In this document: piece after piece, positions 8,169 to 41,800 of the stretch
Numbering within the stretch: position 1 is the stretch's first letter
How the letters are laid out: each line of letters begins with the position of its first letter
Virus record (IMG/VR): IMGVR_UViG_3300047548_001236
Span: 1 to 64,000 of that record
Strand: one strand, 5' to 3'
Length of the DNA: 64,000 nucleotides
Position numbers and translations under genes: made by a program
Notes under the pieces: model-generated
Databases searched by the model: none
What the model saw: the letters and a program-made list of their open reading frames with translations, nothing else
Told to the model about the DNA's origin: nothing

Positions 8169-8244
8169 GATATTATAAATAAGTATGGTTCGCGGATTTC
8201 GTGGTAGTCATCCCAACCATTCTAGAAACAATAGGAGTCCCAGC

Positions 8245-9036
8245 ATGTCTATTTATACACCTTATACCTATCTTATAGGATGGTCTTCAATAAGTAAATA
8301 TTATTATGGCGTCCGTTTTGCGAAAAACTGCCACCCAAGTGATTTGTGGGTGAAGTACTTCACCTCTTCCAAAACCGTAGCTGAATACCGTAAACTTTAC
8401 GGTGAGCCTGACGTGATTGAGGTTCGAAAAACATTCACAGATAAACACTCGGCAATTTTGTGGGAGGAGAGAGTGCTCCGAAAACTAGATATCAAGCACA
8501 ACGAAAAGATGCTTAATGCGAACGTTGCAGGCGCAATCGTGAAGAATCTTGATCACGCAAAAGGAAGACCGAGTAAACTCAGAGGCAGATATTGGACGGA
8601 GGAACAGAAAGCGAAGCTCAGAAAACCAAAATCAGTCCCTAGTCCGTTAAAGGGAAAACAATTGACAGATGAACATAAAGAGAAGCTCCGTGCTGCTAAA
8701 CGCGACTATAAACCGTGGAACGCTGGCAAAACTGGCCTACAGAGTCATTCGAGCGAAACAAAAGAAAAAATGCGGATGGCTAAGATCAAGTCAAAAGTCA
8801 TTATATTTTCAGAATGCCCTTGCTGTAAGGAAATAAAAGTTAAGCCAAATCAAACTTTCTGTAGCAATTCGTGTAGAGCGAAACACAACGCACAAAAATT
8901 ATCAGCTCAGGGAAAATTTGGATTTCAGAACAAGTCTAACCAAGATGCTGCGCAGTTAGCTAGAAGGCCCGTTGGGTTATACGGTGGAGCCCATACCGCA
9001 GACTCAATCAAGCAGCTAGGCGAACCTGTGGCTTGA
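8245..9036 (+). CDS. Homing endonuclease, GIY-YIG-like with NUMOD3 repeats
   Basis: YTYLIGW...YYYGVR, HSSETKEKMR repeats; late promoter TATAAATA at 8174-8181; antisense to its neighbours. Confidence 0.8.
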   Translation: MSIYTPYTYLIGWSSISKYYYGVRFAKNCHPSDLWVKYFTSSKTVAEYRKLYGEPDVIEVRKTFTDKHSAILWEERVLRKLDIKHNEKMLNANVAGAIVKNLDHAKGRPSKLRGRYWTEEQKAKLRKPKSVPSPLKGKQLTDEHKEKLRAAKRDYKPWNAGKTGLQSHSSETKEKMRMAKIKSKVIIFSECPCCKEIKVKPNQTFCSNSCRAKHNAQKLSAQGKFGFQNKSNQDAAQLARRPVGLYGGAHTADSIKQLGEPVA

Positions 9037-9336
9037 AATTATCGTTTGCAATGTTTGTTGCAGTTATTATTGTCTTCGCGGTAACGGCGCTTAGATCCCG
9101 GTAGCTCCATCCTGCCTAGTCCGCCTGTCGATCCTATTTCGAGCCCATCAAAGATACACTTGCTGATATCCTGTTAGATTTCAACTTGACCCACTACAGA
9201 TCAAAGTATCTAACACCGCTTCCGTTATCAGTCCGGTAGGTAGTTAACCTGTTTCCTTTGGCAAGTGTATCTATGGTGGACCCGCTGGGTACCGCCCCCA
9301 GGTCCAGAACGTGTTCAGTGAATATCATCACTACAA
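8962..9336 (-). ncRNA. ssrA: Circularly permuted (two-piece) tmRNA
   Basis: Acceptor piece ends GGGGGCGGTACCCAGCGGGTCCACCA (9274); intervening segment 9147-9273; coding piece starts GGGCTCGAAATAGGATCGAC (9146); tag ANDNFKPQVRLAA* (9008-9049); G3.U70 pair. Confidence 0.93.
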
Positions 9337-9339
9337 TTG

Positions 9340-9370
9340 TATTTATACTAGATCATGCTGAACAAGTCAA
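9340..9370 (-). promoter_or_regulatory. Overlapping sigma70-type (TTGACT-17-TATAAA) and T4 late (TATAAATA) promoter for tmRNA
   Basis: TTGACTTGTTCAGCATGATCTAGTATAAATA. Confidence 0.75.
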
Positions 9371-9500
9371 CCGCGATCGTATCTTCTTTGCTTTTCTTCG
9401 TAGGTGTCGTATCTTTCGGTCTCGCTTCCCATCAACTCCTCCTATGAAAAGAGGGGCTAACCATTGGCCCCTCACGAGTCTATTACGCGACCAGACGTAT

Positions 9501-18569: not shown

Positions 18570-18674
18570 TGGTATCCCAGACAGGATTCGAACCTGCACC
18601 TACGTCGACTGATAACCAGCGGTAGGCCCTAGCTTTTTATGGCCCCGGTGTTTACCCACTTCCACCACTAGGAT
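18570..18674 (-). tRNA. Degenerate Leu-like tRNA with enlarged variable arm
   Basis: Acceptor, D and T arms and CCA intact; anticodon stem poorly paired. Confidence 0.5.
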
Positions 18675-18680
18675 ATTTTT

Positions 18681-18757
18681 TGGAGGTCGACCATGGACTT
18701 GAACCACGACCCCAGCTCTTGCAAGAGCTGTACATTAACCAATTTTGCTAATCGACC
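18681..18757 (-). tRNA. tRNA-Cys-like with 8-nt anticodon loop
   Basis: CAGCT-CTTGCAAG-AGCTG; U73; CCA. Confidence 0.7.
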
Positions 18758-21237: not shown

Positions 21238-21313
21238 TGGCGGCCCTGGTGGGACTCGAACCCACGACCATGAGTTTTAGAGGCTCTAGCTCTACCATCT
21301 GAGCTACAAGGCC
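21238..21313 (-). tRNA. Amber suppressor tRNA (anticodon CUA)
   Basis: Loop CT-CTA-AA, canonical D/T arms, G73, CCA; two mismatches in anticodon stem. Confidence 0.8.
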
Positions 21314-22568: not shown

Positions 22569-23030
22569 CTATTTATTGCAAAGCTCACGAGGCAGCAGGT
22601 CGAATTCAGGAAGATAATCGTTGAAATAACGACGGTAGCTTCCGACGACTGACTTGATCTTACCCTTGACCTTGCGACGCTCTTCAACGTTGCGAATACT
22701 GTTCATCAGGTTGCCGAGCAGATGACGAACCGAAGCAATGTGAGCCTGTTTGTACAGCCTCTCTGCTTCAACCTTGGAGTAACCACGTTCGACAACATAA
22801 TTGACGAAGCAACGATTACCACGTTCTTCATTGCACTTCCGGCACATCACGAACATGTTGTCCGTAGTATCTGGACCACCGTACGACTTTGCTACCATGT
22901 GGTCAACAGTCGCCATGTTGCGTTGCACTTTATCAGGATTTGCTTTCCAGACCAACTGAACGTTGCAGCAAGGGCAACGACGAAGTCCGCTTTCGAAAGC
23001 ATTCTGCAGGGCTGTTTTCTTGAAGCACAT
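22569..23030 (-). CDS. HNH endonuclease
   Basis: CPCC...ATVDHMVAKSYGG...NMFVMCRKCNEERG. Confidence 0.85.
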   Translation of the reverse strand: MCFKKTALQNAFESGLRRCPCCNVQLVWKANPDKVQRNMATVDHMVAKSYGGPDTTDNMFVMCRKCNEERGNRCFVNYVVERGYSKVEAERLYKQAHIASVRHLLGNLMNSIRNVEERRKVKGKIKSVVGSYRRYFNDYLPEFDLLPRELCNK

Positions 23031-23399: not shown

Positions 23400-24355
23400 T
23401 CTACTTGCAACGGGGAGTACGAGGGGATTTGCACCAGGCCCCTGAACCTTCTCCTCTTTTCAGCTCCTCAGGGAAGGAGCCTACTTCTGCACCTTGCTTA
23501 CTCCGCTCTGGAAGTAGAATATTGTTGCGGGTGAGATTACCCCGTATTGTGAGCGCCTTTCCGATGTACCACATCCCTTGCGAGGAGTGTTGTCGGGTTA
23601 TCCACAAGAGTCTTTCGATCATCTTGTATCGCTCAGTGCTGCCGTTTTTGAGGTCTGGCTGTTGACCTGTCGCATGTTACTACTCGTCCGTCTTTCCTAC
23701 GCCTGCCTTGCGAGCAGCTCAGAGGCGCTAACCTCCTACGTGATCATTCTGAACAACTACTCTAGCCTTGCGAGCCTTCGTAGGCCTGATTATCTTTCGA
23801 CTCAGGCATTAAGCACCTTTCGTAACACACCGGAGCAGACTTTCGCTTTTTGAATCTATGTTGCTTTGAACCAAAATCAAACGCTAATTTAATAGCTGCG
23901 AACCTACTGAGAAGTGCTGCTCCAGTTGCTCCACACCTTGTTAGATGCAGAATACCACACTCCTCCTGTCTTTCTCCTTGCGGGATACTCAACGTCACTT
24001 CACGAATCCGGTGTGACCCTTCCTCGTTGATGATCCTACACCGCCCTTCTACGCGAATAGTCGGACTATGTAGACACCTGTTGGACTTTTCCATTCGTTA
24101 GTTTGGCTGAAAACTGTTTGGGCGCCAACCCTCTTACACCTCACCGATCGGCTCTGGTGCTATCCTTTCGGACAGTCTTCCTAACTTACTGGATACCTCC
24201 TAGCTTCTAAGGCTAGAAGGGACTTGCTTTCGGTTTAATCCGAGTCAAGTCTATCCCAGGCTTGTATGAATGGACCATTTTACTGGCGCAGGTATGTAGG
24301 AATCCCTGCTTTGGGTGTGTTACCACACTTACCCTGACGACGTCATACCGCCATT
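23400..24355 (-). ncRNA. Candidate large structured ncRNA (about 950 nt)
   Basis: No credible ORF, many hairpins, downstream of a promoter and boxA within the tRNA island. Confidence 0.45.
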
Positions 24356-26843: not shown

Positions 26844-27947
26844 TCAAGCGGCCATATCTACTTCATAAAGGAATCTTGTGTTCGGCATCAGCTTGCGATT
26901 GTAGGAAGTCGATTGAACGAACACGTCATACGGAAGACCATTAGGACTAACGTTGCCACGCATACCATAAGGAATTCCGATCATTTCTCGGGCGCGAGCA
27001 CCAGTGTACATATCACCAGTCAGCTTGTCTCGCAGCACGACTTCTTTGTTTGGTTGGATTTCTTCACGCTTGGTGAATTCGTAGAACCCACGACCAGTTT
27101 GGAAGATCAGGTTATGATCCTGCACAAACTCTTTAATGACGCGAGGAGCTGAACCGACATCCATCACCTGGAATCTGCCTGGATCGACCGGCTTGAGATC
27201 AGCCGACATATTCTGGTCGATCTTAACATAACGTCCCTTTGCATCGCGAGGACGGTTGGTGAGAACACCAAACGACTTGTCCAAAGTACGGTTCATGCGA
27301 CCGCTATTAGCTACAACTTCTTCATACTCACGAACGCGCTCTTCGGATACCTGACGATATACGATAGCGTTCACGAGGCTCAAGATGTCAGTGAACTGAT
27401 CCAAATACAGATGGTATCCATTACCGATACGAGCCAACTCTGAGTAGTAAGGAGGAGCTTCTGGCCTGGACAAGCATTGAATGGTATAAATCTGGATTCC
27501 CATGTCAGCCAACTTGCGAGCTTCTTGTCTCCAGTCGATACGATCTCTGTTGTCGCGATAGTTTGGCGTGTGAGCAATCTCATCGCCAATCATTACAAGA
27601 ATTTTACGAGCGTTCAATGACCAGTTGAAAGCAGTCTGTGCTTGACGAAGCACTAGTTCATAGGCTTCACCGCCGTTACCGCCACCACCAGTTGGATTGA
27701 CATTTCGCACGAATTGTGTAAGAGTGTAGAGATCCGTAGTCAGATCGACTTGCTTGGTAATGTACCCATAGCGATGGAGATCGCAGTAGTCGCCGTTTGC
27801 ACCAAGGCCGATTCTGAGATTGGGGATTTCTTTAAAAAGAGAACCTACAGTGTTCTCCAGGTTTCGCCTGACTTGGTCTAGGCAGGGGTACATCGACCCG
27901 GTAGTGTCAAAATTGAAAACGATTTCGAGCTTATCTTGCGTATTCAT
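26844..27947 (-). CDS. vWA domain protein
   Basis: FNFDTTGSM, GDYCD, GGG..EAYE, LVMIGD. Confidence 0.88.
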   Translation of the reverse strand: MNTQDKLEIVFNFDTTGSMYPCLDQVRRNLENTVGSLFKEIPNLRIGLGANGDYCDLHRYGYITKQVDLTTDLYTLTQFVRNVNPTGGGGNGGEAYELVLRQAQTAFNWSLNARKILVMIGDEIAHTPNYRDNRDRIDWRQEARKLADMGIQIYTIQCLSRPEAPPYYSELARIGNGYHLYLDQFTDILSLVNAIVYRQVSEERVREYEEVVANSGRMNRTLDKSFGVLTNRPRDAKGRYVKIDQNMSADLKPVDPGRFQVMDVGSAPRVIKEFVQDHNLIFQTGRGFYEFTKREEIQPNKEVVLRDKLTGDMYTGARAREMIGIPYGMRGNVSPNGLPYDVFVQSTSYNRKLMPNTRFLYEVDMAA

Positions 27948-28078
27948 GTGTATTCTCCGTATGTTTTGTATATGTGCGTATATTTTTGTATGAACAATGT
28001 GTAGGCACGATGTAGTAATGCGTTCACAACACTATTTATACACGGTTACGCATACGATACAGCACCTACGAAGAAAAA

Positions 28079-28177
28079 TATCCTGGTTGGACTCGAACCA
28101 ACGGCCTGCGCTTTATTCCCAGCGTTTGGGTCCTTCACCATGAGGGAGCACTGCTCTACCGACTGAGCTACAGGATG
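28079..28177 (-). ncRNA. tRNA-like RNA with 34-nt anticodon loop, no CCA
   Basis: Canonical D and T arms; two hairpins in the anticodon loop. Confidence 0.6.
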
Positions 28178-28190
28178 TTTCGGAATTCGT

Positions 28191-28248
28191 TGGTACCCCC
28201 GGCCGGACTCGAACCGGCAAGCCCGAAGGCGCTTCATTTTGAGTGAAA
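28191..28248 (-). pseudogene. 3' remnant of tRNA-Leu(CAA)
   Basis: TTTCA-CTCAAAA-TGAAG, variable arm, T arm, CCA; 5' half absent. Confidence 0.8.
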
Positions 28249-28284
28249 TCTCTACTAATATAAATACCCCAAAAGGATGTAGAA

Positions 28285-29100
28285 ATGCACTTGTTATTTG
28301 ACTGCGTCGAGGGAAAGAACCCCGAAGATATCATACCCCGTAAGTATCGTGCCTTGATCAAACTGCTTGGGAAGCATACTCCCACATATCATGATCTTCA
28401 ACAATTTCGTGATAAGGTTCATGATATGATTCATGTCACTGGTTACAGTCCTAGTCAGATACAGAACCTCTTGGGGGTCGAATATTCTGATTTTGGTATG
28501 TTTATTAAGCGCTGTCTCGGCATCAAGCTTAAACATATACGCGACGCTAACATCGCATCTGCTGTTAGGATGGGTAGAAACACATCAGACGAAAAGCAAC
28601 GTTACATGAAATCGTGTGAGTTTTCTTTCGATCCATATTCTTATCCGGATGTTCCGGGGTATCAACTATTACTCGACCGTGGTATATATCACCCCAAGAG
28701 TAACCCAACCGGGGTGTGTAGAGACCATATGGTATCGAAAGAGTATGGTTGGAGGAACCACATACCACCTAATGTGATTTCAAGTGTGTACAATTGTGAA
28801 TTTCTGTTGCATCACGACAATGTCAAAAAGAGTACAGCATGCTCGATTACACCAAATATGCTGTACGAAAGAATAGCAAGTGCTAGTTTTGATCCCCTGG
28901 TAAAAACTACACATATGCTATCTAAAACCGTCGAACACAAGACAAAAATTTCTAAAACCCTTTCCACATACATGTGTGTTACAGATGGCACTTGTAATAT
29001 CAGGATATTGAAGACAGACCCAATACCAGAGGGGTTTAGGAGAGGTATGACTAGAAAGCGTAAAATGGTAGGCGTGGTCGGACTCGAACCGACAGAATGA
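28285..29100 (+). CDS. Putative HNH-like homing endonuclease
   Basis: RDHMVS...NCEFL...N..K; C-terminal TDG...IPEGFRRG motif; TATAAATA at 28259. Confidence 0.7.
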   Translation: MHLLFDCVEGKNPEDIIPRKYRALIKLLGKHTPTYHDLQQFRDKVHDMIHVTGYSPSQIQNLLGVEYSDFGMFIKRCLGIKLKHIRDANIASAVRMGRNTSDEKQRYMKSCEFSFDPYSYPDVPGYQLLLDRGIYHPKSNPTGVCRDHMVSKEYGWRNHIPPNVISSVYNCEFLLHHDNVKKSTACSITPNMLYERIASASFDPLVKTTHMLSKTVEHKTKISKTLSTYMCVTDGTCNIRILKTDPIPEGFRRGMTRKRKMVGVVGLEPTE

Positions 29101-29146
29101 CGCTCTTTTTGAGAGAGCCGACTTTACCAAATTTGCCCACACGCCC
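29066..29146 (-). tRNA. tRNA-Leu(CAA), short variable region
   Basis: GCTCT-CTCAAAA-AGAGC; CCA. Confidence 0.88.
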
Positions 29147-29154
29147 ATTTTTAT

Positions 29155-29227
29155 TCAGGATGGCCTTCTGTAAGCTACTACAAATTGGAGGTTTGTTGCT
29201 TTCTGAGATATTGGCTGAAACCATCTT
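29155..29227 (-). ncRNA. CAGC-stem cassette 6
   Basis: GATGG/CCATC stem plus TTTCAGCCAA. Confidence 0.5.
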
Positions 29228-29236
29228 ATAATTTAT

Positions 29237-29321
29237 TCAGGATCAATGTTTGTGGAATCGAACCACTTCGACAAGTTTTTCAAGACTCGTTTTATCCGAA
29301 GATGTTGCGGAACTGATCCTT
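29237..29321 (-). ncRNA. CCGCAA cassette 7 carrying anticodon-like arm and T arm
   Basis: AGGATCA/TGATCCT; CGAGTCTTGAAAAACTTG; GTGGTTCGATTCCAC. Confidence 0.7.
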
Positions 29322-29713
29322 TATTTGTCTTTACATACTATCAAACAGTTCCTCATGGAAGTCAATAATTAATTTGCCCAGCCGCTTCCTGGGCGATGTA
29401 CCTACTTTGACCTTACGTCCTAGACCGGTACCCGGTGCTCGCGCGGACCCAAGCCACTAGTGCTCTCCATATTTATAGACCCATGGGCTGATGATGGGTC
29501 TTTCTTACATAGGTTGAGTCTGATATGCATTTTAAGATCCCCGCTTATACTCTGCTCGGATCACGTTTGAAGTTAGACTTCAACTCGTCTTAGACGGACC
29601 ATCCCGTTGCTTTCAGAGGTTAAACCACCTATGTGAGTCATGTCCCGGGTCCCCGTACGGTGAACCTATTACCCCCTCGAGGCAAGCCTCACTACAGGAC
29701 GGGCATTTCATAC

Positions 29714-29830
29714 TTACGAGCTGGCTTTCTTATCGTTGTAAGCCTTGAGCTTCGCAAGAAACTCTTCTTCTGTTAGCGAGTGCCAACCAACACATTTGCC
29801 AGTCGGCGATCGTCCACATCCACAGTCCAT
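29714..29830 (-). CDS. 38-aa CDGSH-like Fe-S/Zn mini-protein
   Basis: MDCGCGRSPTGKCVGWHSLTEEEF...; AAGGA SD; below the ORF-track size cutoff. Confidence 0.7.
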   Translation of the reverse strand: MDCGCGRSPTGKCVGWHSLTEEEFLAKLKAYNDKKASS

Positions 29831-31797: not shown

Positions 31798-32523
31798 TTA
31801 TATGGTGCGGCCGAAGTTCCACCCGTCAGGGAGAGTGTCTCCTTTAGCCATTTTCCTATTGTTGTGACCGTCTGTTATCCAAACAGAGTTCTCTGTTTTT
31901 CCACGCACCCAACCTTCTGGTATATCGGAATCGTTAGTTAGACGTTTATTCGTTTTACCGTCGGTTATCCACATAAACGGTTGTCTCTTTCCTTTATTCC
32001 GCTCTTTAGAGCGGTAATTTGAATCTTTCCATTTCTGAGAAATACTTTCTGATATTTTCTGTTTATGTTCTTCGGTTTTTGCCACACCTTTGTGGAGTTT
32101 GCTATTGTGTTCAGCTATACGCTTTTTGTGATCAACCGTCAACTTGCGCCCAACACCGTGCTTATTCCCTTTCATGGCGCGTGAAATAAGTTTTTTTGTT
32201 GATTCGTTATGTGTTCTACCCTCGAACGTCAACCCATTGATCTGTTTACCGCCCAGACCACCCCCAACGCAAATGTTATATGTATCAGAACGCGCGACAA
32301 AATCTTCGTTAACTATTTCTCGTTCTTTTTGAATTGCAGCGTCAAGAGTATCGAAGCGGTACATTACTTCCTTAGAAAAGGTGTCTCTACCATACTTTAC
32401 AATAGCCCTTTTTAATAGTTTTCCGGAACCCATATATCCGTCATCAACATCGTCGGTTTTATGAAGTCCAATGTATATTTTACCATTAGCCAAATTAGTA
32501 ACTTTGTAAATGGTGTAATCCAT
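31798..32523 (-). CDS. Seg-like GIY-YIG homing endonuclease with NUMOD3
   Basis: TIYKVTNLANGKIYIG, YMGSG, HNESTKKLIS. Confidence 0.9.
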   Translation of the reverse strand: MDYTIYKVTNLANGKIYIGLHKTDDVDDGYMGSGKLLKRAIVKYGRDTFSKEVMYRFDTLDAAIQKEREIVNEDFVARSDTYNICVGGGLGGKQINGLTFEGRTHNESTKKLISRAMKGNKHGVGRKLTVDHKKRIAEHNSKLHKGVAKTEEHKQKISESISQKWKDSNYRSKERNKGKRQPFMWITDGKTNKRLTNDSDIPEGWVRGKTENSVWITDGHNNRKMAKGDTLPDGWNFGRTI

Positions 32524-41674: not shown

Positions 41675-41800
41675 TGGCGACCCCGGTAGGACTCGAACCT
41701 ACAACCTACTGATTAGATCGTGCCTTAGAAGATTCGCACTTCACTGGGCTTCCATACCCTCAGGCCAAGTCAGTTGCTCTATCCATTGAGCTACGGAGTC
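41675..41800 (-). tRNA. tRNA-Arg(UCU) interrupted by a 50-nt insert in the anticodon
   Basis: Removing 41717-41766 restores a 76-nt cloverleaf with loop CTTCTAA. Confidence 0.85.

What the first reader, a model, noticed from the sequence alone, without database searches (positions are those of the whole stretch)
28191..29146. HEG between a truncated tRNA-Leu(CAA) and an intact, divergent tRNA-Leu(CAA)
Seen: the remnant starts at the anticodon stem next to the HEG's TATAAATA. The intact isoacceptor has a different acceptor stem and a short variable region, and overlaps the HEG stop in antisense. Inference: a selfish nuclease travelling with a cleavage-resistant replacement tRNA, the same logic as at the tmRNA locus. 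T4 SegB is a known tRNA-region HEG.
Basis: partly seen in the sequence, partly recalled or inferred. Interest (0 to 1): 0.75.

Follow-up and report, generated by a model that had tools for sequence, protein, structure and literature searches.

The report
Homing nuclease cassette carrying replacement tRNA-Leu
In this jumbo phage a roughly 900-base selfish insert, made of a nuclease gene and its own complete tRNA-Leu(CAA), has replaced the first third of the phage's original tRNA-Leu(CAA) gene; related phages still carry the uninterrupted original gene at the same spot.

Summary

**Anatomy.** Window 28191-28246 (-) is the 3' two-thirds of a long-variable-arm tRNA-Leu(CAA). 28285-29100 (+) is an intact 271-aa ORF behind a T4-type late promoter, TATAAATA. 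29066-29146 (-) is a complete but divergent tRNA-Leu(CAA) ("tRNA*") whose 3' end overlaps the ORF stop by 35 nt.

**Empty alleles.** Two relatives (L090, L088) carry one full-length tRNA-Leu(CAA) and no ORF between the same flanks. The window remnant matches the L090 gene at 54 of 56 positions. The insert (~28247-29151: promoter, ORF, tRNA*) therefore replaced about nt 1-28 of the native gene.

**Mobility.**
- Filled and empty alleles interleave on the backbone tree.
- The L005 remnant is a chimera of the two native alleles.
- A wastewater contig carries the block 28229-29708 at 99.5% identity on a backbone only 87% identical.

**The protein.** It has no Pfam match. It has an invariant RDH…N…N core, weak but consistent HNH fold and profile matches, and a Seg-like C-terminal DNA-binding module.

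**Wider pattern.** All 13 contexts of full-length homologs abut a tRNA-Leu gene. The core domain marks a wider set of ORFs living in phage tRNA arrays.

**Not tested.** Cleavage of the native gene and resistance of tRNA* remain untested.

The parts
28191..28246 (-). Remnant of the resident (native) tRNA-Leu(CAA): from the middle of the anticodon-stem 5' strand through the anticodon loop CUCAAAA, the 13-nt variable arm, T arm, acceptor 3' strand, A73 and CCA. The 5' third (about nt 1-28) is missing.
   Evidence: Sequence. 54/56 identical to the full-length tRNA-Leu(CAA) of the empty allele L090:577-661. Rfam gives only 15.6 bits. No tRNA fold.
28247..28258 (-). Insert-borne D-loop-like fossil (tRNA sense ..AUUAGUAGAGAUU). 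This is where homology to the empty allele ends. Similar pieces (AAUGGUAGA followed by a T-rich run) sit upstream of the promoter in distant homologous cassettes.
   Evidence: Break point in alignment A2. Comparison of upstream regions of L005, L007, L012, L017, L004, L010 and L020. Reading it as a fossil is inference.
28259..28266 (+). T4-type late promoter motif TATAAATA for the nuclease ORF, 18 nt before the ATG. A Shine-Dalgarno AAGGA lies at 28273-28277.
   Evidence: 15 copies in the window against 1.36 expected. Only two are on the + strand, and each lies immediately before a +-strand HEG-like ORF. The motif is conserved upstream of homologs.
28285..29100 (+). 271-aa free-standing homing-endonuclease-like ORF. 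It has an N-terminal helical region, a divergent HNH-like core (R146 D147 H148 ... N170 C171 ... N179 K182), and a C-terminal NUMOD3-like 'HKxKIS' plus 'ITDG..N.R....IPEGFRRG' DNA-binding module. The last 11 codons are the antisense of tRNA*.
   Evidence: ORF. No Pfam or PDB sequence hit. phrog_23051 E 7e-20. Invariant residues. Model pLDDT 82, best fold hits all HNH nucleases but weak. hhalign to a Pfam-HNH protein E 5e-4. C-terminus similar to ORF 31798-32520, E 3e-8.
29066..29146 (-). tRNA*: a complete tRNA-Leu(CAA) carried by the insert. 81 nt, acceptor GGGCGUG/CACGCCU (G1:U72), 8-nt variable region, A73, encoded CCA. It is the only complete tRNA-Leu(CAA) in the 282,855-bp genome.
   Evidence: ARAGORN. 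Rfam 48.3 bits. Absent from empty alleles. 95-99% conserved in L005 and L007, with a compensatory acceptor-pair change in L007.
28247..29151 (.). The whole insert relative to empty alleles (fossil, promoter, ORF, tRNA*, and about 3-5 nt 'AAT/AAAAT'). It replaces about nt 1-28 of the native tRNA gene. The right-hand junction is fuzzy, at 29147-29153.
   Evidence: Alignments A2 and A3 of window, L005 and L007 (filled) against L090 and L088 (empty). L007 keeps 'GC', the first 2 nt of the native tRNA, at the junction.
28229..29708 (.). Recently exchanged block: 99.5% identical in a wastewater-metagenome contig whose adjacent VWA gene is only 87% identical. The left edge lies in the remnant's variable arm.
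   Evidence: read laying, run X2 record 1: 7 differences in 1480 nt against 39 in 293 nt, with 1212 nt instead of 335 between the two parts.

Best explanation
This is a free-standing homing-endonuclease cassette that targets the phage's tRNA-Leu(CAA) gene and brings its own substitute tRNA.

**Shown.**
- Relatives with an empty site have one complete, long-variable-arm tRNA-Leu(CAA) between the same flanks.
- In the window, about nt 1-28 of that gene have been replaced by an insert of about 905 nt. The insert holds a late promoter, the 271-aa ORF, and a complete, sequence-divergent tRNA-Leu(CAA) (tRNA*). The 3' two-thirds of the old gene remain as a dead remnant.
- The cassette is mobile. Filled and empty alleles are interleaved on the backbone phylogeny. 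The ORF of L007 is far more divergent than its backbone. The L005 remnant is a chimera of two native alleles, with the crossover in the variable arm. A nearly identical block sits on a clearly different backbone in another metagenome.

**Inferred.**
- Late in a mixed infection the HNH-like nuclease is made from TATAAATA. It cuts the uninterrupted native tRNA-Leu(CAA) gene of a cassette-free co-infecting relative. The site most likely involves the D-stem/anticodon-stem region, because that part is lost or rewritten in every filled allele while the retained remnant must be immune.
- The break is then repaired by recombination from the filled allele. One homology arm is the tRNA 3' part plus downstream DNA; the other is the flank 5' of the tRNA.
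- The recipient thus receives ORF plus tRNA* and loses its own gene's 5' third.
- tRNA* differs from the native gene in all four stems and in the variable arm. It keeps UUG decoding available, so the insertion costs the phage little, and it is presumed not to be cut.
- The tRNA-derived repeats flanking the ORF may also serve as portable homology. That would explain why the same layout is found in very different phages.
For: **Anatomy:**

**Empty alleles.**
- L090 (VWA neighbour 97% aa identical) and L088 (88%) have a single 85/84-nt tRNA-Leu(CAA) and no ORF between the insertion-bearing neighbour tRNA and the flank ATTAATCAGGATGGCCTTCTGTAAGC.
- The remnant is 54/56 identical to L090, and the break point is inside the anticodon-stem 5' strand.
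- tRNA* abuts the native 5' flank.
- The L090 gene folds as a perfect type II cloverleaf.

**Mobility.**
- Pairwise nt identities are given in the order window-L005 / window-L007 / L005-L007. The VWA gene is about 79/82/78% and the ORF about 83/57/57%.
- In the VWA tree, filled L007 groups with empty L090 and L088 at 99/99 support.
- The L005 remnant is L090-type through 'UGAGGCGCC' and L088-type from 'GCAAGGCGUGUCGG…CUCAGGCACCA'.
- Run X2 holds 28229-29708 at 99.5% identity while its VWA part is 87%.

**Nuclease.**
- R146, D147, H148 and S151 are invariant, and N170, N179 and K182 are present in 60 of 61 family members.
- The top Foldseek and VIA hits for aa ~100-213 are all HNH nucleases (5h0m, 4h9d, Cas9 HNH), with Z up to 3.5.
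- AFDB hits are named HNH and NUMOD.
- hhalign aligns DHMVSKEYGW…N…DN to the HNH motif of a Pfam-confirmed HNH protein, E 5e-4.
- The C-terminal module is shared with a GIY-YIG/NUMOD3 ORF.

**Generality.**
- Full-length homologs in 12 distinct contexts abut a tRNA-Leu(CAA), and a 13th abuts tRNA-Leu(TAG). Six have long 3' remnants and three have short ones.
- The tRNA-Gly(TCC)-linked subgroup shows the same layout: intact tRNA, ORF, 3' remnant.
- GAP32_472 lies between two tRNA(CAT) genes.

**Other points.**
- tRNA* is the only complete tRNA-Leu(CAA) in the genome.
- Precedent: T4 SegB cuts a tRNA gene in segB-less relatives (PMC2330249).
Against: - No enzymology. Nuclease activity, the target and the cut position are inferred.
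- The catalytic assignment rests on weak structural scores (Foldseek E at least 0.4; VIA Z at most 3.5), a 31%-probability profile match and a motif. There is no Pfam or PDB sequence hit.
- tRNA* and its 5' flank are as conserved between window and L007 as the backbone is (88-95%) while the ORF is 57%. ORF and tRNA* therefore need not always move as one unit.
- In L012/L013 the ORF sits upstream of an intact type II tRNA-Leu(CAA), with no tRNA at its 3' end.
- L014, L016 and L022 show no clear remnant.
- tRNA* function (aminoacylation with Leu despite the 8-nt variable region) is untested. Its minimum-free-energy fold is not a clean cloverleaf.
- The relatives compared are different species-level phages (VWA 77-88% nt identity), not isogenic strains.
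Confidence: 0.75

Rival explanations
1. tRNA* is a resident gene: one of two tandem tRNA-Leu(CAA) copies. The nuclease ORF alone inserted into the downstream copy, so nothing 'travels with' the nuclease.
For: tRNA* and its 5' flank are concordant with the backbone between window and L007, while the ORF is not. In L012/L013 the ORF occurs without a tRNA at its 3' end.
Against: Both empty alleles have only one tRNA-Leu(CAA) at the site. It is of the remnant's type, and tRNA* is absent there. tRNA* directly abuts the native 5' flank, which leaves no room for a former tandem copy. The near-identical X2 block includes tRNA*. ORF stop and tRNA 3' end abut or overlap in 11 of 12 Leu(CAA)-linked contexts.
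Confidence: 0.07
2. The cassette is above all a beneficial tRNA module. tRNA*, with its shortened variable arm and altered stems, escapes a host tRNA-cleaving defence or a rival phage's nuclease. The nuclease gene spreads or amplifies it, so selection on the phage, not only selfish drive, maintains the unit.
For: The variable region is shortened in several cassette tRNAs: 8 nt in window, L005 and L007, and 5 nt in L004 and L010. All other tRNA-Leu genes of this genome are 84-94 nt. Published work reports that phage tRNAs evade anticodon nucleases (PMC10264068, listed). It also reports that SegB amplifies tRNA loci against Septu, which cuts a tRNA variable loop (PMC13096335, abstract).
Against: Other cassette tRNAs keep a full long variable arm (L017, L018, L020, L022). 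No host or defence system is known for this uncultured phage. This reading adds to the homing explanation rather than excluding it.
Confidence: 0.15
3. The ORF is not a nuclease but a DNA- or RNA-binding factor functionally tied to tRNA-Leu(CAA), for example a regulator or processing factor. The indel arose by ordinary illegitimate recombination.
For: No Pfam or PDB sequence match. The structural matches to HNH are weak.
Against: The D-H…N…N constellation is invariant across 61 proteins. Every top fold hit is an HNH nuclease. The C-terminal module is shared with a GIY-YIG/NUMOD3 HEG. The ORF is antisense to the tRNA array and has its own late promoter. Presence/absence, chimeric junctions and a recently transferred block are hallmarks of homing.
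Confidence: 0.04
4. Integrase-type insertion into a tRNA gene, or a group I intron with an intron-encoded nuclease in the tRNA-Leu anticodon loop.
For: A tRNA 3' part is duplicated next to an insert, as at att sites. tRNA-Leu genes are classic group I intron hosts (my own knowledge).
Against: The 905-nt insert holds only this ORF and tRNA*, with no integrase. tRNA* is complete on its own, and its acceptor 5' strand does not pair with the remnant's 3' strand, so it is not a reconstituted chimera. Rfam finds no intron in 27950-29800. The ORF is antisense to the tRNA.
Confidence: 0.01

Closest known systems
T4 SegB (GIY-YIG free-standing homing endonuclease in the T4 tRNA gene cluster; PMC2330249)
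   Same: A free-standing HEG inside a phage tRNA cluster. Its target lies within a tRNA gene of relatives that lack the HEG. It causes preferential inheritance of the HEG-bearing tRNA region, with co-conversion of flanks.
   Different: SegB is GIY-YIG; this ORF has a divergent HNH-like core and no GIY-YIG motif. SegB recognises the generic T-loop motif and cuts many tRNA genes, whereas this clade is tied to a single tRNA species. The T4 allele is not described as carrying a same-anticodon substitute tRNA beside a truncated remnant of the target.
Intronless homing with localized marker exclusion (T4 SegF/gene 56, SegG/gene 32, SegE; cited in PMC2330249; details from my own knowledge)
   Same: The nuclease gene is linked to a variant of the neighbouring gene that replaces the recipient's allele after cleavage. 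It has its own promoter and is present or absent among relatives.
   Different: There the neighbouring gene is an ordinary allele at its own locus. Here the cargo is a second, complete tRNA that substitutes for a target gene left visibly truncated. The tRNA-derived repeats flank the ORF.
HNH homing endonucleases with NUMOD modules (e.g. I-HmuI, T4 MobE; T5 tRNA-region F-Tfl enzymes; my own knowledge, not tested here)
   Same: A ββα-Me-type D-H…N…N motif followed by NUMOD3-like and C-terminal DNA-binding modules. Residence in phage genomes, some in tRNA regions.
   Different: No Pfam HNH, HNH_3 or NUMOD3 model reaches threshold on this ORF. There is an ~8-residue insertion between DH and the first N. 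No sequence match to any solved structure.
Integrative elements that target tRNA genes and carry a replacement 3' end
   Same: The insertion disrupts a tRNA gene, function is preserved by sequence that the element brings, and a partial tRNA copy is left at the other end.
   Different: No integrase or att logic. The element brings a whole, unrelated-sequence tRNA rather than a matching 3' end. Spread is inferred to occur by double-strand-break repair.

Membership tests
Free-standing homing endonuclease genes (intronless homing) | ORF present or absent at the same locus in otherwise syntenic relatives | tested here: met
   Filled: window, L005, L007. Empty: L090, L088. Flanks are the same. The states are interleaved on the VWA tree.
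Free-standing homing endonuclease genes (intronless homing) | Co-conversion or mosaicism of flanking sequence around the insert | tested here: met
   The L005 remnant is chimeric between the L090-type and L088-type alleles. ORF identity is discordant with the backbone. A 99.5% block sits on an 87% backbone, with its edge in the remnant.
Free-standing homing endonuclease genes (intronless homing) | Site-specific cleavage of the ORF-less allele and immunity of the ORF-bearing allele | not testable with these tools
   Needs a cleavage assay.
Free-standing homing endonuclease genes (intronless homing) | Nuclease domain joined to modular DNA-binding motifs (NUMOD-type) | tested here: inconclusive
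   Pfam NUMOD3 does not hit this ORF. Its aa 212-256 match the C-terminus of NUMOD3-positive ORF 31798-32520 at E 3e-8. An AFDB hit is named 'nuclease associated modular domain'.
HNH (ββα-Me) nuclease superfamily | Conserved D/H-H general-base motif, structural Asn, and metal-ligand Asn/His in order | tested here: met
   D147 and H148 are invariant. N170 and N179 are present in 60/61. They align to DH…N…CN of a Pfam-HNH protein.
HNH (ββα-Me) nuclease superfamily | Significant match to a curated HNH sequence model (Pfam PF01844, PF13392, PF14279) | tested here: not met
   No family at E up to 0.1-1 for the ORF or any of 19 aligned homologs. No PDB sequence hit with the profile.
HNH (ββα-Me) nuclease superfamily | ββα-metal fold | tested here: inconclusive
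   Model pLDDT is 82 overall and above 90 in the core. The best PDB and AFDB matches for aa ~100-213 are all HNH nucleases, but weak: Foldseek E 0.4-5, VIA Z up to 3.5, TM below 0.4.
T4 SegB / GIY-YIG Seg family | GIY-YIG catalytic domain | tested here: not met
   No GIY-YIG Pfam hit or motif in the ORF. So it works like SegB but is not a member.
Bacterial-type tRNA-Leu (for tRNA*) | Cloverleaf, CAA anticodon, A73 discriminator, Leu-type D arm, long (type II) variable arm | tested here: inconclusive
   Cloverleaf, CAA, A73 and CCA are present (ARAGORN; Rfam 48.3 bits). A compensatory acceptor change in L007 argues for function. The variable region is only 8 nt, so it is not type II. Charging with Leu was not tested.
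Group I intron in tRNA-Leu / integrase-mediated tRNA insertion | Intron RNA core with flanking exons forming one tRNA; or an integrase with identical att repeats | tested here: not met
   No intron family in 27950-29800 at E up to 10. tRNA* is complete on its own. There is no integrase ORF. The remnant and tRNA* differ in their acceptor strands.

The most novel reading that the evidence does not exclude
The RDH…N…N core defines a large, so far unannotated superfamily of phage nucleases. Each lineage would be dedicated to one tRNA (or tmRNA-like) gene. These nucleases would remodel phage tRNA arrays by cutting a resident tRNA gene and installing a different, same-anticodon tRNA, leaving duplicates and 3' remnants behind. 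On this reading, homing nucleases rather than codon usage alone would drive much of the turnover, duplication and pseudo-tRNA content of jumbo-phage tRNA islands. The tRNA-derived repeats flanking each ORF would act as portable homology arms that let a cassette jump between unrelated phages. The enzymes would also be a ready set of natural nucleases specific for individual tRNA genes.
Probability: 0.4. Interest if true: 0.85.

Novelty: new variant of a known kind. Interest (0 to 1): 0.7.

Why it matters
Free-standing homing endonucleases and marker exclusion are established, and SegB shows that a phage tRNA gene can be a target. Three things are new here.

1. **A documented replace-and-compensate cassette.** The nuclease's insertion destroys the target tRNA gene, and the same insert supplies a complete, sequence-divergent tRNA with the same anticodon. 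Filled alleles, empty alleles and recombinant junctions are all in hand.
2. **An unannotated nuclease family.** The core has no Pfam model and is labelled 'hypothetical protein' in GAP32, Serratia BF, Erwinia and Lak phages. It is found almost exclusively inside phage tRNA arrays, with lineages tied to particular tRNAs.
3. **A concrete mechanism for tRNA-array change.** It could explain why phage tRNA arrays hold duplicated, truncated and oddly shaped tRNAs, and how arrays change quickly between close relatives.

The case is directly testable: one synthesised gene and three short DNA substrates would show whether the native gene is cut and the substitute is spared.

Tried and rejected
- **Phage GenBank, DNA.** blastn of 27900-29800 found no match.
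- **Phage GenBank, protein.** tblastn of the ORF found only core-domain hits in jumbo phages, all unannotated.
- **Neighbour-protein search.** The first search with the VWA neighbour in viral contigs found nothing.
- **Exact-pattern scans for tRNA*.** Viral contigs gave 0. Metagenome contigs gave only the contig already held as L006.
- **Sequence-family searches on the ORF.** Pfam on the ORF and on 19 homologs, and a profile search of PDB sequences, gave no usable hit.
- **Group I intron or split-tRNA reading.** Rejected. There is no intron model hit, tRNA* is complete, and no matching 5' half exists anywhere in the 282-kb genome.
- **Integrase-type insertion.** Rejected, because the insert has no integrase and tRNA* is not a chimera.
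- **Compensatory T-stem difference between the window and L005 remnants.** I first read this as selection on the remnant. The empty alleles show instead that the two remnants descend from two different native alleles.
- **G1:U72 as a hallmark of cassette tRNAs.** Dropped, because the native L090 tRNA has it too.
- **Whole-record search of L088.** A search for a second copy was not possible because the record is not held.
- **Read laying.** Most short pieces at 28191-28225 are generic tRNA-Leu 3' ends of other organisms and were ignored.
Full report
**Setting.** The window is the first 64 kb of a 282,855-bp IMG/VR phage record judged complete.
- It holds a tRNA island entirely on the minus strand. 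ARAGORN finds 38 tRNA genes in the window and 51 in the genome.
- Rfam adds a two-piece alpha-type tmRNA and a GOLLD RNA.
- The nearest named relative of the neighbouring VWA protein is Rhizobium phage RHph_I1_18, at 57% identity.
- Runs that hold the sequence are freshwater and wastewater metagenomes.

**Check of the observation.**
- *Remnant.* On the minus strand, 28246→28191 reads UCA-CUCAAAA-UGAAG, CGCCUUCGGGCUU, GCCGG-UUCGAGU-CCGGC, CGGGGGU-A-CCA. This is a tRNA-Leu(CAA) from the middle of the anticodon-stem 5' strand to the CCA end, with a canonical long variable arm. Nothing resembling the acceptor 5' strand or D stem precedes it, so Rfam scores it at 15.6 bits.
- *Promoter and ORF.* Twelve bases further on lies TATAAATA (28259-28266), then AAGGA (28273-28277), then the ATG of a 271-codon ORF on the plus strand (28285-29100).
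- *Intact tRNA.* ARAGORN and Rfam (48.3 bits) find a complete 81-nt tRNA-Leu(CAA) at 29066-29146 on the minus strand. Its acceptor stem is GGGCGUG/CACGCCU, its variable region is 8 nt, and it has A73 and an encoded CCA.
- *Overlap.* Its 3' end overlaps the ORF by 35 nt, so the ORF's last 11 residues (MVGVVGLEPTE) are simply the antisense of the tRNA's acceptor and T arm. Homologs that do not overlap a tRNA end about 11 residues earlier, so the tail is probably dispensable.
- *Promoter motif.* TATAAATA, the T4-type late promoter, occurs 15 times in the window against 1.4 expected. Only two copies are on the plus strand, and each sits immediately before a plus-strand HEG-like ORF.

**The decisive comparison: empty alleles.**
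- *How they were found.* Homologs of the neighbouring VWA protein led to syntenic contigs.
- *What they hold.* L090 (VWA 97% aa identical) and L088 (88%) have the same flanks as the window. One flank is the neighbour tRNA with a 33-nt anticodon-loop insertion. The other is the sequence ATTAATCAGGATGGCCTTCTGTAAGC…. Between these flanks lies a single full-length tRNA-Leu(CAA) of 85 or 84 nt, with no ORF. The L090 gene folds into a perfect type II cloverleaf.
- *Left junction.* The window remnant is identical to the L090 gene at 54 of 56 positions. Homology stops inside the anticodon stem: window …CATTTTGAGTGA|AATCTCTACTAATATAAATA, L090 …CATTTTGAGTGA|GGTGTGGTTACCAATTTCACCACAGGGGC.
- *Right junction.* tRNA* plus 3-5 nt abuts the flank that precedes the native tRNA's 5' end in the empty alleles. 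L007 even keeps the first two bases (GC) of the native gene there.
- *Conclusion.* An insert of about 905 nt (~28247-29151) has replaced about nt 1-28 of the resident tRNA gene. It consists of a short D-loop-like fossil, the late promoter, the ORF and tRNA*. tRNA* is cargo. It is absent from the empty alleles and is the only complete tRNA-Leu(CAA) in the whole genome.

**Evidence that the insert moves.**
- *Discordant divergence.* Pairwise nt identities are given in the order window-L005 / window-L007 / L005-L007. Across the VWA gene the three filled relatives are about equidistant (79/82/78%). Across the ORF the figures are 83/57/57%. The discordant block runs from the remnant to the ORF's 3' end.
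- *Tree.* In a maximum-likelihood tree of the VWA gene, filled L007 groups with empty L090 and L088 (99/99 support). Window and L005 branch outside this group. Presence or absence therefore needs at least two events.
- *Two native alleles.* L090-type and L088-type tRNAs differ in all stems. The window remnant is L090-type. The L005 remnant is L090-type through the anticodon arm (…UGAGGCGCC) and L088-type from the variable arm onward (GCAAGGCGUGUCGG…CUCAGGCACCA). This is a crossover of the kind left by co-conversion when a cassette with a piece of its previous host's remnant enters a different allele.
- *Decay.* In L007 the remnant's 3' part has been deleted exactly up to the native spacer, which is ordinary decay.
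- *A recent transfer.* In wastewater run X2, a 6.9-kb contig matches 28229-29708 with 7 differences in 1480 nt (99.5%). It matches the VWA part 27601-27893 with 39 differences in 293 nt (87%) and has 1212 nt instead of 335 between the two parts. A nearly identical block of part of the remnant, the ORF, tRNA* and about 560 nt of flank thus sits on a different backbone. Its left edge again falls in the remnant's variable arm.
- *Age of the truncation.* The window remnant shows only 2 changes against a gene in a backbone that is 83% identical in the VWA gene. This suggests the truncation in this lineage is recent. That is an inference, since tRNA genes evolve slowly while functional.

**What the ORF encodes.**
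- *Sequence searches.* No Pfam model and no PDB sequence matches it or 19 aligned homologs. PHROGs places aa 102-198 in phrog_23051, of unknown function.
- *Conserved residues.* The alignment shows invariant R146, D147, H148, S151, N170, C171, N179 and K182. In 61 unique proteins of the wider family, R146, D147, H148 and S151 are invariant, and N170, N179 and K182 are present in 60 of 61.
- *Structure.* An AlphaFold model from the alignment has mean pLDDT 82, above 90 in the core. Every top structural match for aa ~100-213 is an HNH nuclease: phage GVE2 HNH, Gme HNH, Cas9 HNH domains and McrA-type enzymes. The scores are weak (Foldseek E at least 0.4; VIA Z at most 3.5). AlphaFold-DB cluster hits carry the names HNH and 'nuclease associated modular domain'.
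- *Profile comparison.* A profile-sequence comparison aligns DHMVSKEYGW…N…DN with DHMVAKSYGG…N…CN of window ORF 22569-23027, which does pass Pfam HNH (E 5e-4, probability 31%).
- *C-terminal module.* Residues 212-256 (HKxKIS…ITDG..N.R….IPEGFRRG) match the C-terminus of window ORF 31798-32520 at E 3e-8. That ORF has a GIY-YIG-like start and a NUMOD3 hit.
- *My reading.* This is a divergent HNH-type (H-N-N) nuclease core fused to the DNA-binding modules usual in phage homing endonucleases. That is an assignment from convergent but individually weak evidence, not a demonstrated activity.

**Generality.**
- *Full-length homologs.* There are 28 in the protein collection, at 38-99% identity. They were examined in 13 distinct genomic contexts.
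- *Abutting tRNA.* In 12 contexts the ORF abuts a tRNA-Leu(CAA) on the opposite strand: window, L004/L019, L005, L007, L010, L012, L014, L016, L017, L018, L020 and L022. The contexts range from AT-rich to GC-rich and include 0.2-0.5-Mb genomes, some with a T4-like Gp23 capsid gene nearby. The 13th context, L021, abuts tRNA-Leu(TAG).
- *Usual layout.* It is the same as in the window: an intact tRNA whose 3' end touches or overlaps the stop, the ORF antisense to it, TATAAATA, and then a 5'-truncated tRNA-Leu.
- *Remnants.* Long remnants (T arm, acceptor, CCA) occur in window, L005, L004, L010, L017 and L018. Short ones (D-loop to anticodon loop only) occur in L007, L012 and L020. None is evident in L014, L016 or L022.
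- *Exception.* In L012/L013 the ORF with its short fossil lies just upstream of an intact type II tRNA-Leu(CAA), and no tRNA is at its 3' end.
- *Wider core family.* The core domain alone is found in more than 60 IMG/VR contigs. In 66 of the 76 loci scanned, a tRNA lies within 70-100 nt of an ORF end, and sub-groups go with particular tRNAs. The tRNA-Gly(TCC) sub-group repeats the anatomy, with a …CCCGCUCCA 3' remnant directly upstream of the ORF. One group lies between two tRNA-Ala(UGC) genes.
- *Cultured phages.* The core occurs in jumbo phages such as Cronobacter GAP32, Serratia BF, Erwinia pEa_SNUABM and Lak phages, always as 'hypothetical protein' or unannotated. GAP32_472 lies between two tRNA(CAT) genes, with its stop overlapping one of them.

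**How it most likely works.** What is shown is the structure of filled and empty alleles, the cargo status of tRNA*, and recombinational mobility. The rest is inferred.
- The nuclease is made late from its own promoter.
- It cuts the uninterrupted native tRNA-Leu(CAA) gene of a cassette-free relative in a mixed infection. The break is repaired from the filled allele.
- Because the retained remnant (about nt 29-76) must itself be immune, the recognition or cleavage site should include or span the lost 5' third. The D-stem/anticodon-stem region is the obvious candidate, and it is also where the cassette-borne fossils are rewritten to a T-rich run.
- tRNA* differs from the native gene in every stem and in the variable arm, so it is plausibly not recognised. 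It restores a UUG decoder.
- The partial tRNA on one side and the complete tRNA on the other give the cassette tRNA-derived homology on both sides. This would help it enter tRNA-Leu(CAA) genes of phages that share no other sequence. That last point is a hypothesis.

**Caveats.**
- ORF and tRNA* need not always travel together. tRNA* is 95% identical between window and L007 while the ORFs are 57% identical, and L012 lacks the 3' tRNA.
- Leucylation of a tRNA with an 8-nt variable region is plausible from what is known of bacterial LeuRS identity rules (A73 and D-loop/T-loop architecture rather than the arm; my own knowledge). It is untested.
- A compensatory acceptor-pair change in L007 argues that tRNA* is under selection for structure.
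- A non-exclusive alternative is that the altered tRNA also serves to escape tRNA-cleaving defences (PMC10264068, PMC13096335).

**Comparison with what is known.**
- It works like T4 SegB and the SegF/SegG marker-exclusion systems (PMC2330249). It is not a member of the GIY-YIG Seg family.
- Membership in the HNH superfamily is supported by motif and fold trend but fails curated sequence models.
- Full-text searches found no description of a truncated tRNA plus homing endonuclease plus substitute tRNA arrangement in phages. That is absence within the searched library only.

**Verdict.** It is a new variant of a known kind.

Noticed in passing
window 8174-9374: A plus-strand 283-aa ORF (8185-9036) has a Pfam NUMOD3 hit. 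It is preceded by TATAAATA (8174-8181), and its 3' end overlaps the 3' end of the permuted alpha-type tmRNA (8962-9374, -). The layout is the same as at the tRNA-Leu locus, but the protein is not a sequence relative of the 271-aa ORF.
   Followed up: partly
window 28078-28177, 41678-41800, 18573-18674 (all -): These tRNA genes pass Rfam's tRNA threshold but carry 25-50 extra nucleotides in the anticodon loop, and ARAGORN misses them. The one at 28078-28177 has a C1:A72 mismatch. It is conserved in L005, L007, L090 and L088, in two allelic forms of the inserted part. Whether these are small introns or unusual tRNA-like RNAs is open.
   Followed up: partly
window 29237-29322 (-): A tRNA-like cloverleaf in the spacer 5' of tRNA*, not called by ARAGORN or Rfam. 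It has an acceptor stem, a T arm GUGG-UUCGAUU-CCAC and an 8-nt 'anticodon' loop. It is 93% identical to L007 and is also present in the empty alleles, so it is more conserved than its surroundings.
   Followed up: partly
window 29370-29720: A long non-coding stretch between tRNA* and the Dps/ferritin gene. Segments are conserved in L088 and L090 (e.g. CCCGGGTCCCCATACGGTGAACCTATTACC). No Rfam match. It may be a structured RNA.
   Followed up: no
window 23528-23965 (-), 21238-21313 (-), 18681-18757 (-): A GOLLD RNA (195 bits), a tRNA with a CUA (amber-reading) anticodon, and a tRNA with a 4-base anticodon call (UGCA) all lie within the tRNA island.
   Followed up: no
window 22569-23030 (-), 31798-32523 (-); L088:3908-4882: There are further mobile nuclease genes in the island. 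One is a Pfam HNH ORF. Another is a GIY-YIG-like/NUMOD3 ORF next to tRNA-Gln. In the 'empty' relative L088, a 324-aa GIY-YIG-like/DUF7487 ORF sits between the VWA gene and the neighbour tRNA, where the window has none. The island is a hotspot for several unrelated HEGs.
   Followed up: partly
window 26844-27947 (-): The 367-aa VWA-domain protein next to the locus has full-length homologs at 45-49% identity annotated in cnidarian, lancelet and annelid genome assemblies (Porites, Acropora, Nematostella, Branchiostoma, Owenia). Whether this is horizontal transfer or contamination is unknown.
   Followed up: no
G000:C1:230588-230827 (-) (L002): A second, short (143-aa open frame) copy of the RDH-core domain (35% identity over aa 123-199) lies far outside the tRNA island, with no tRNA within 5 kb.
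   Followed up: partly
L014:4788-4871 vs L016:4789-4869: Two closely related ~0.49-Mb phages carry cassette tRNA-Leu(CAA) genes with identical 5' acceptor strands and 3' halves. Their D and anticodon arms are rearranged: L016 reads GGUAGACUCAAAAGUCUCAAACAC and ends ..GUACUA instead of ..GUACCA. This looks like a repair scar in the region proposed as the nuclease target.
   Followed up: no
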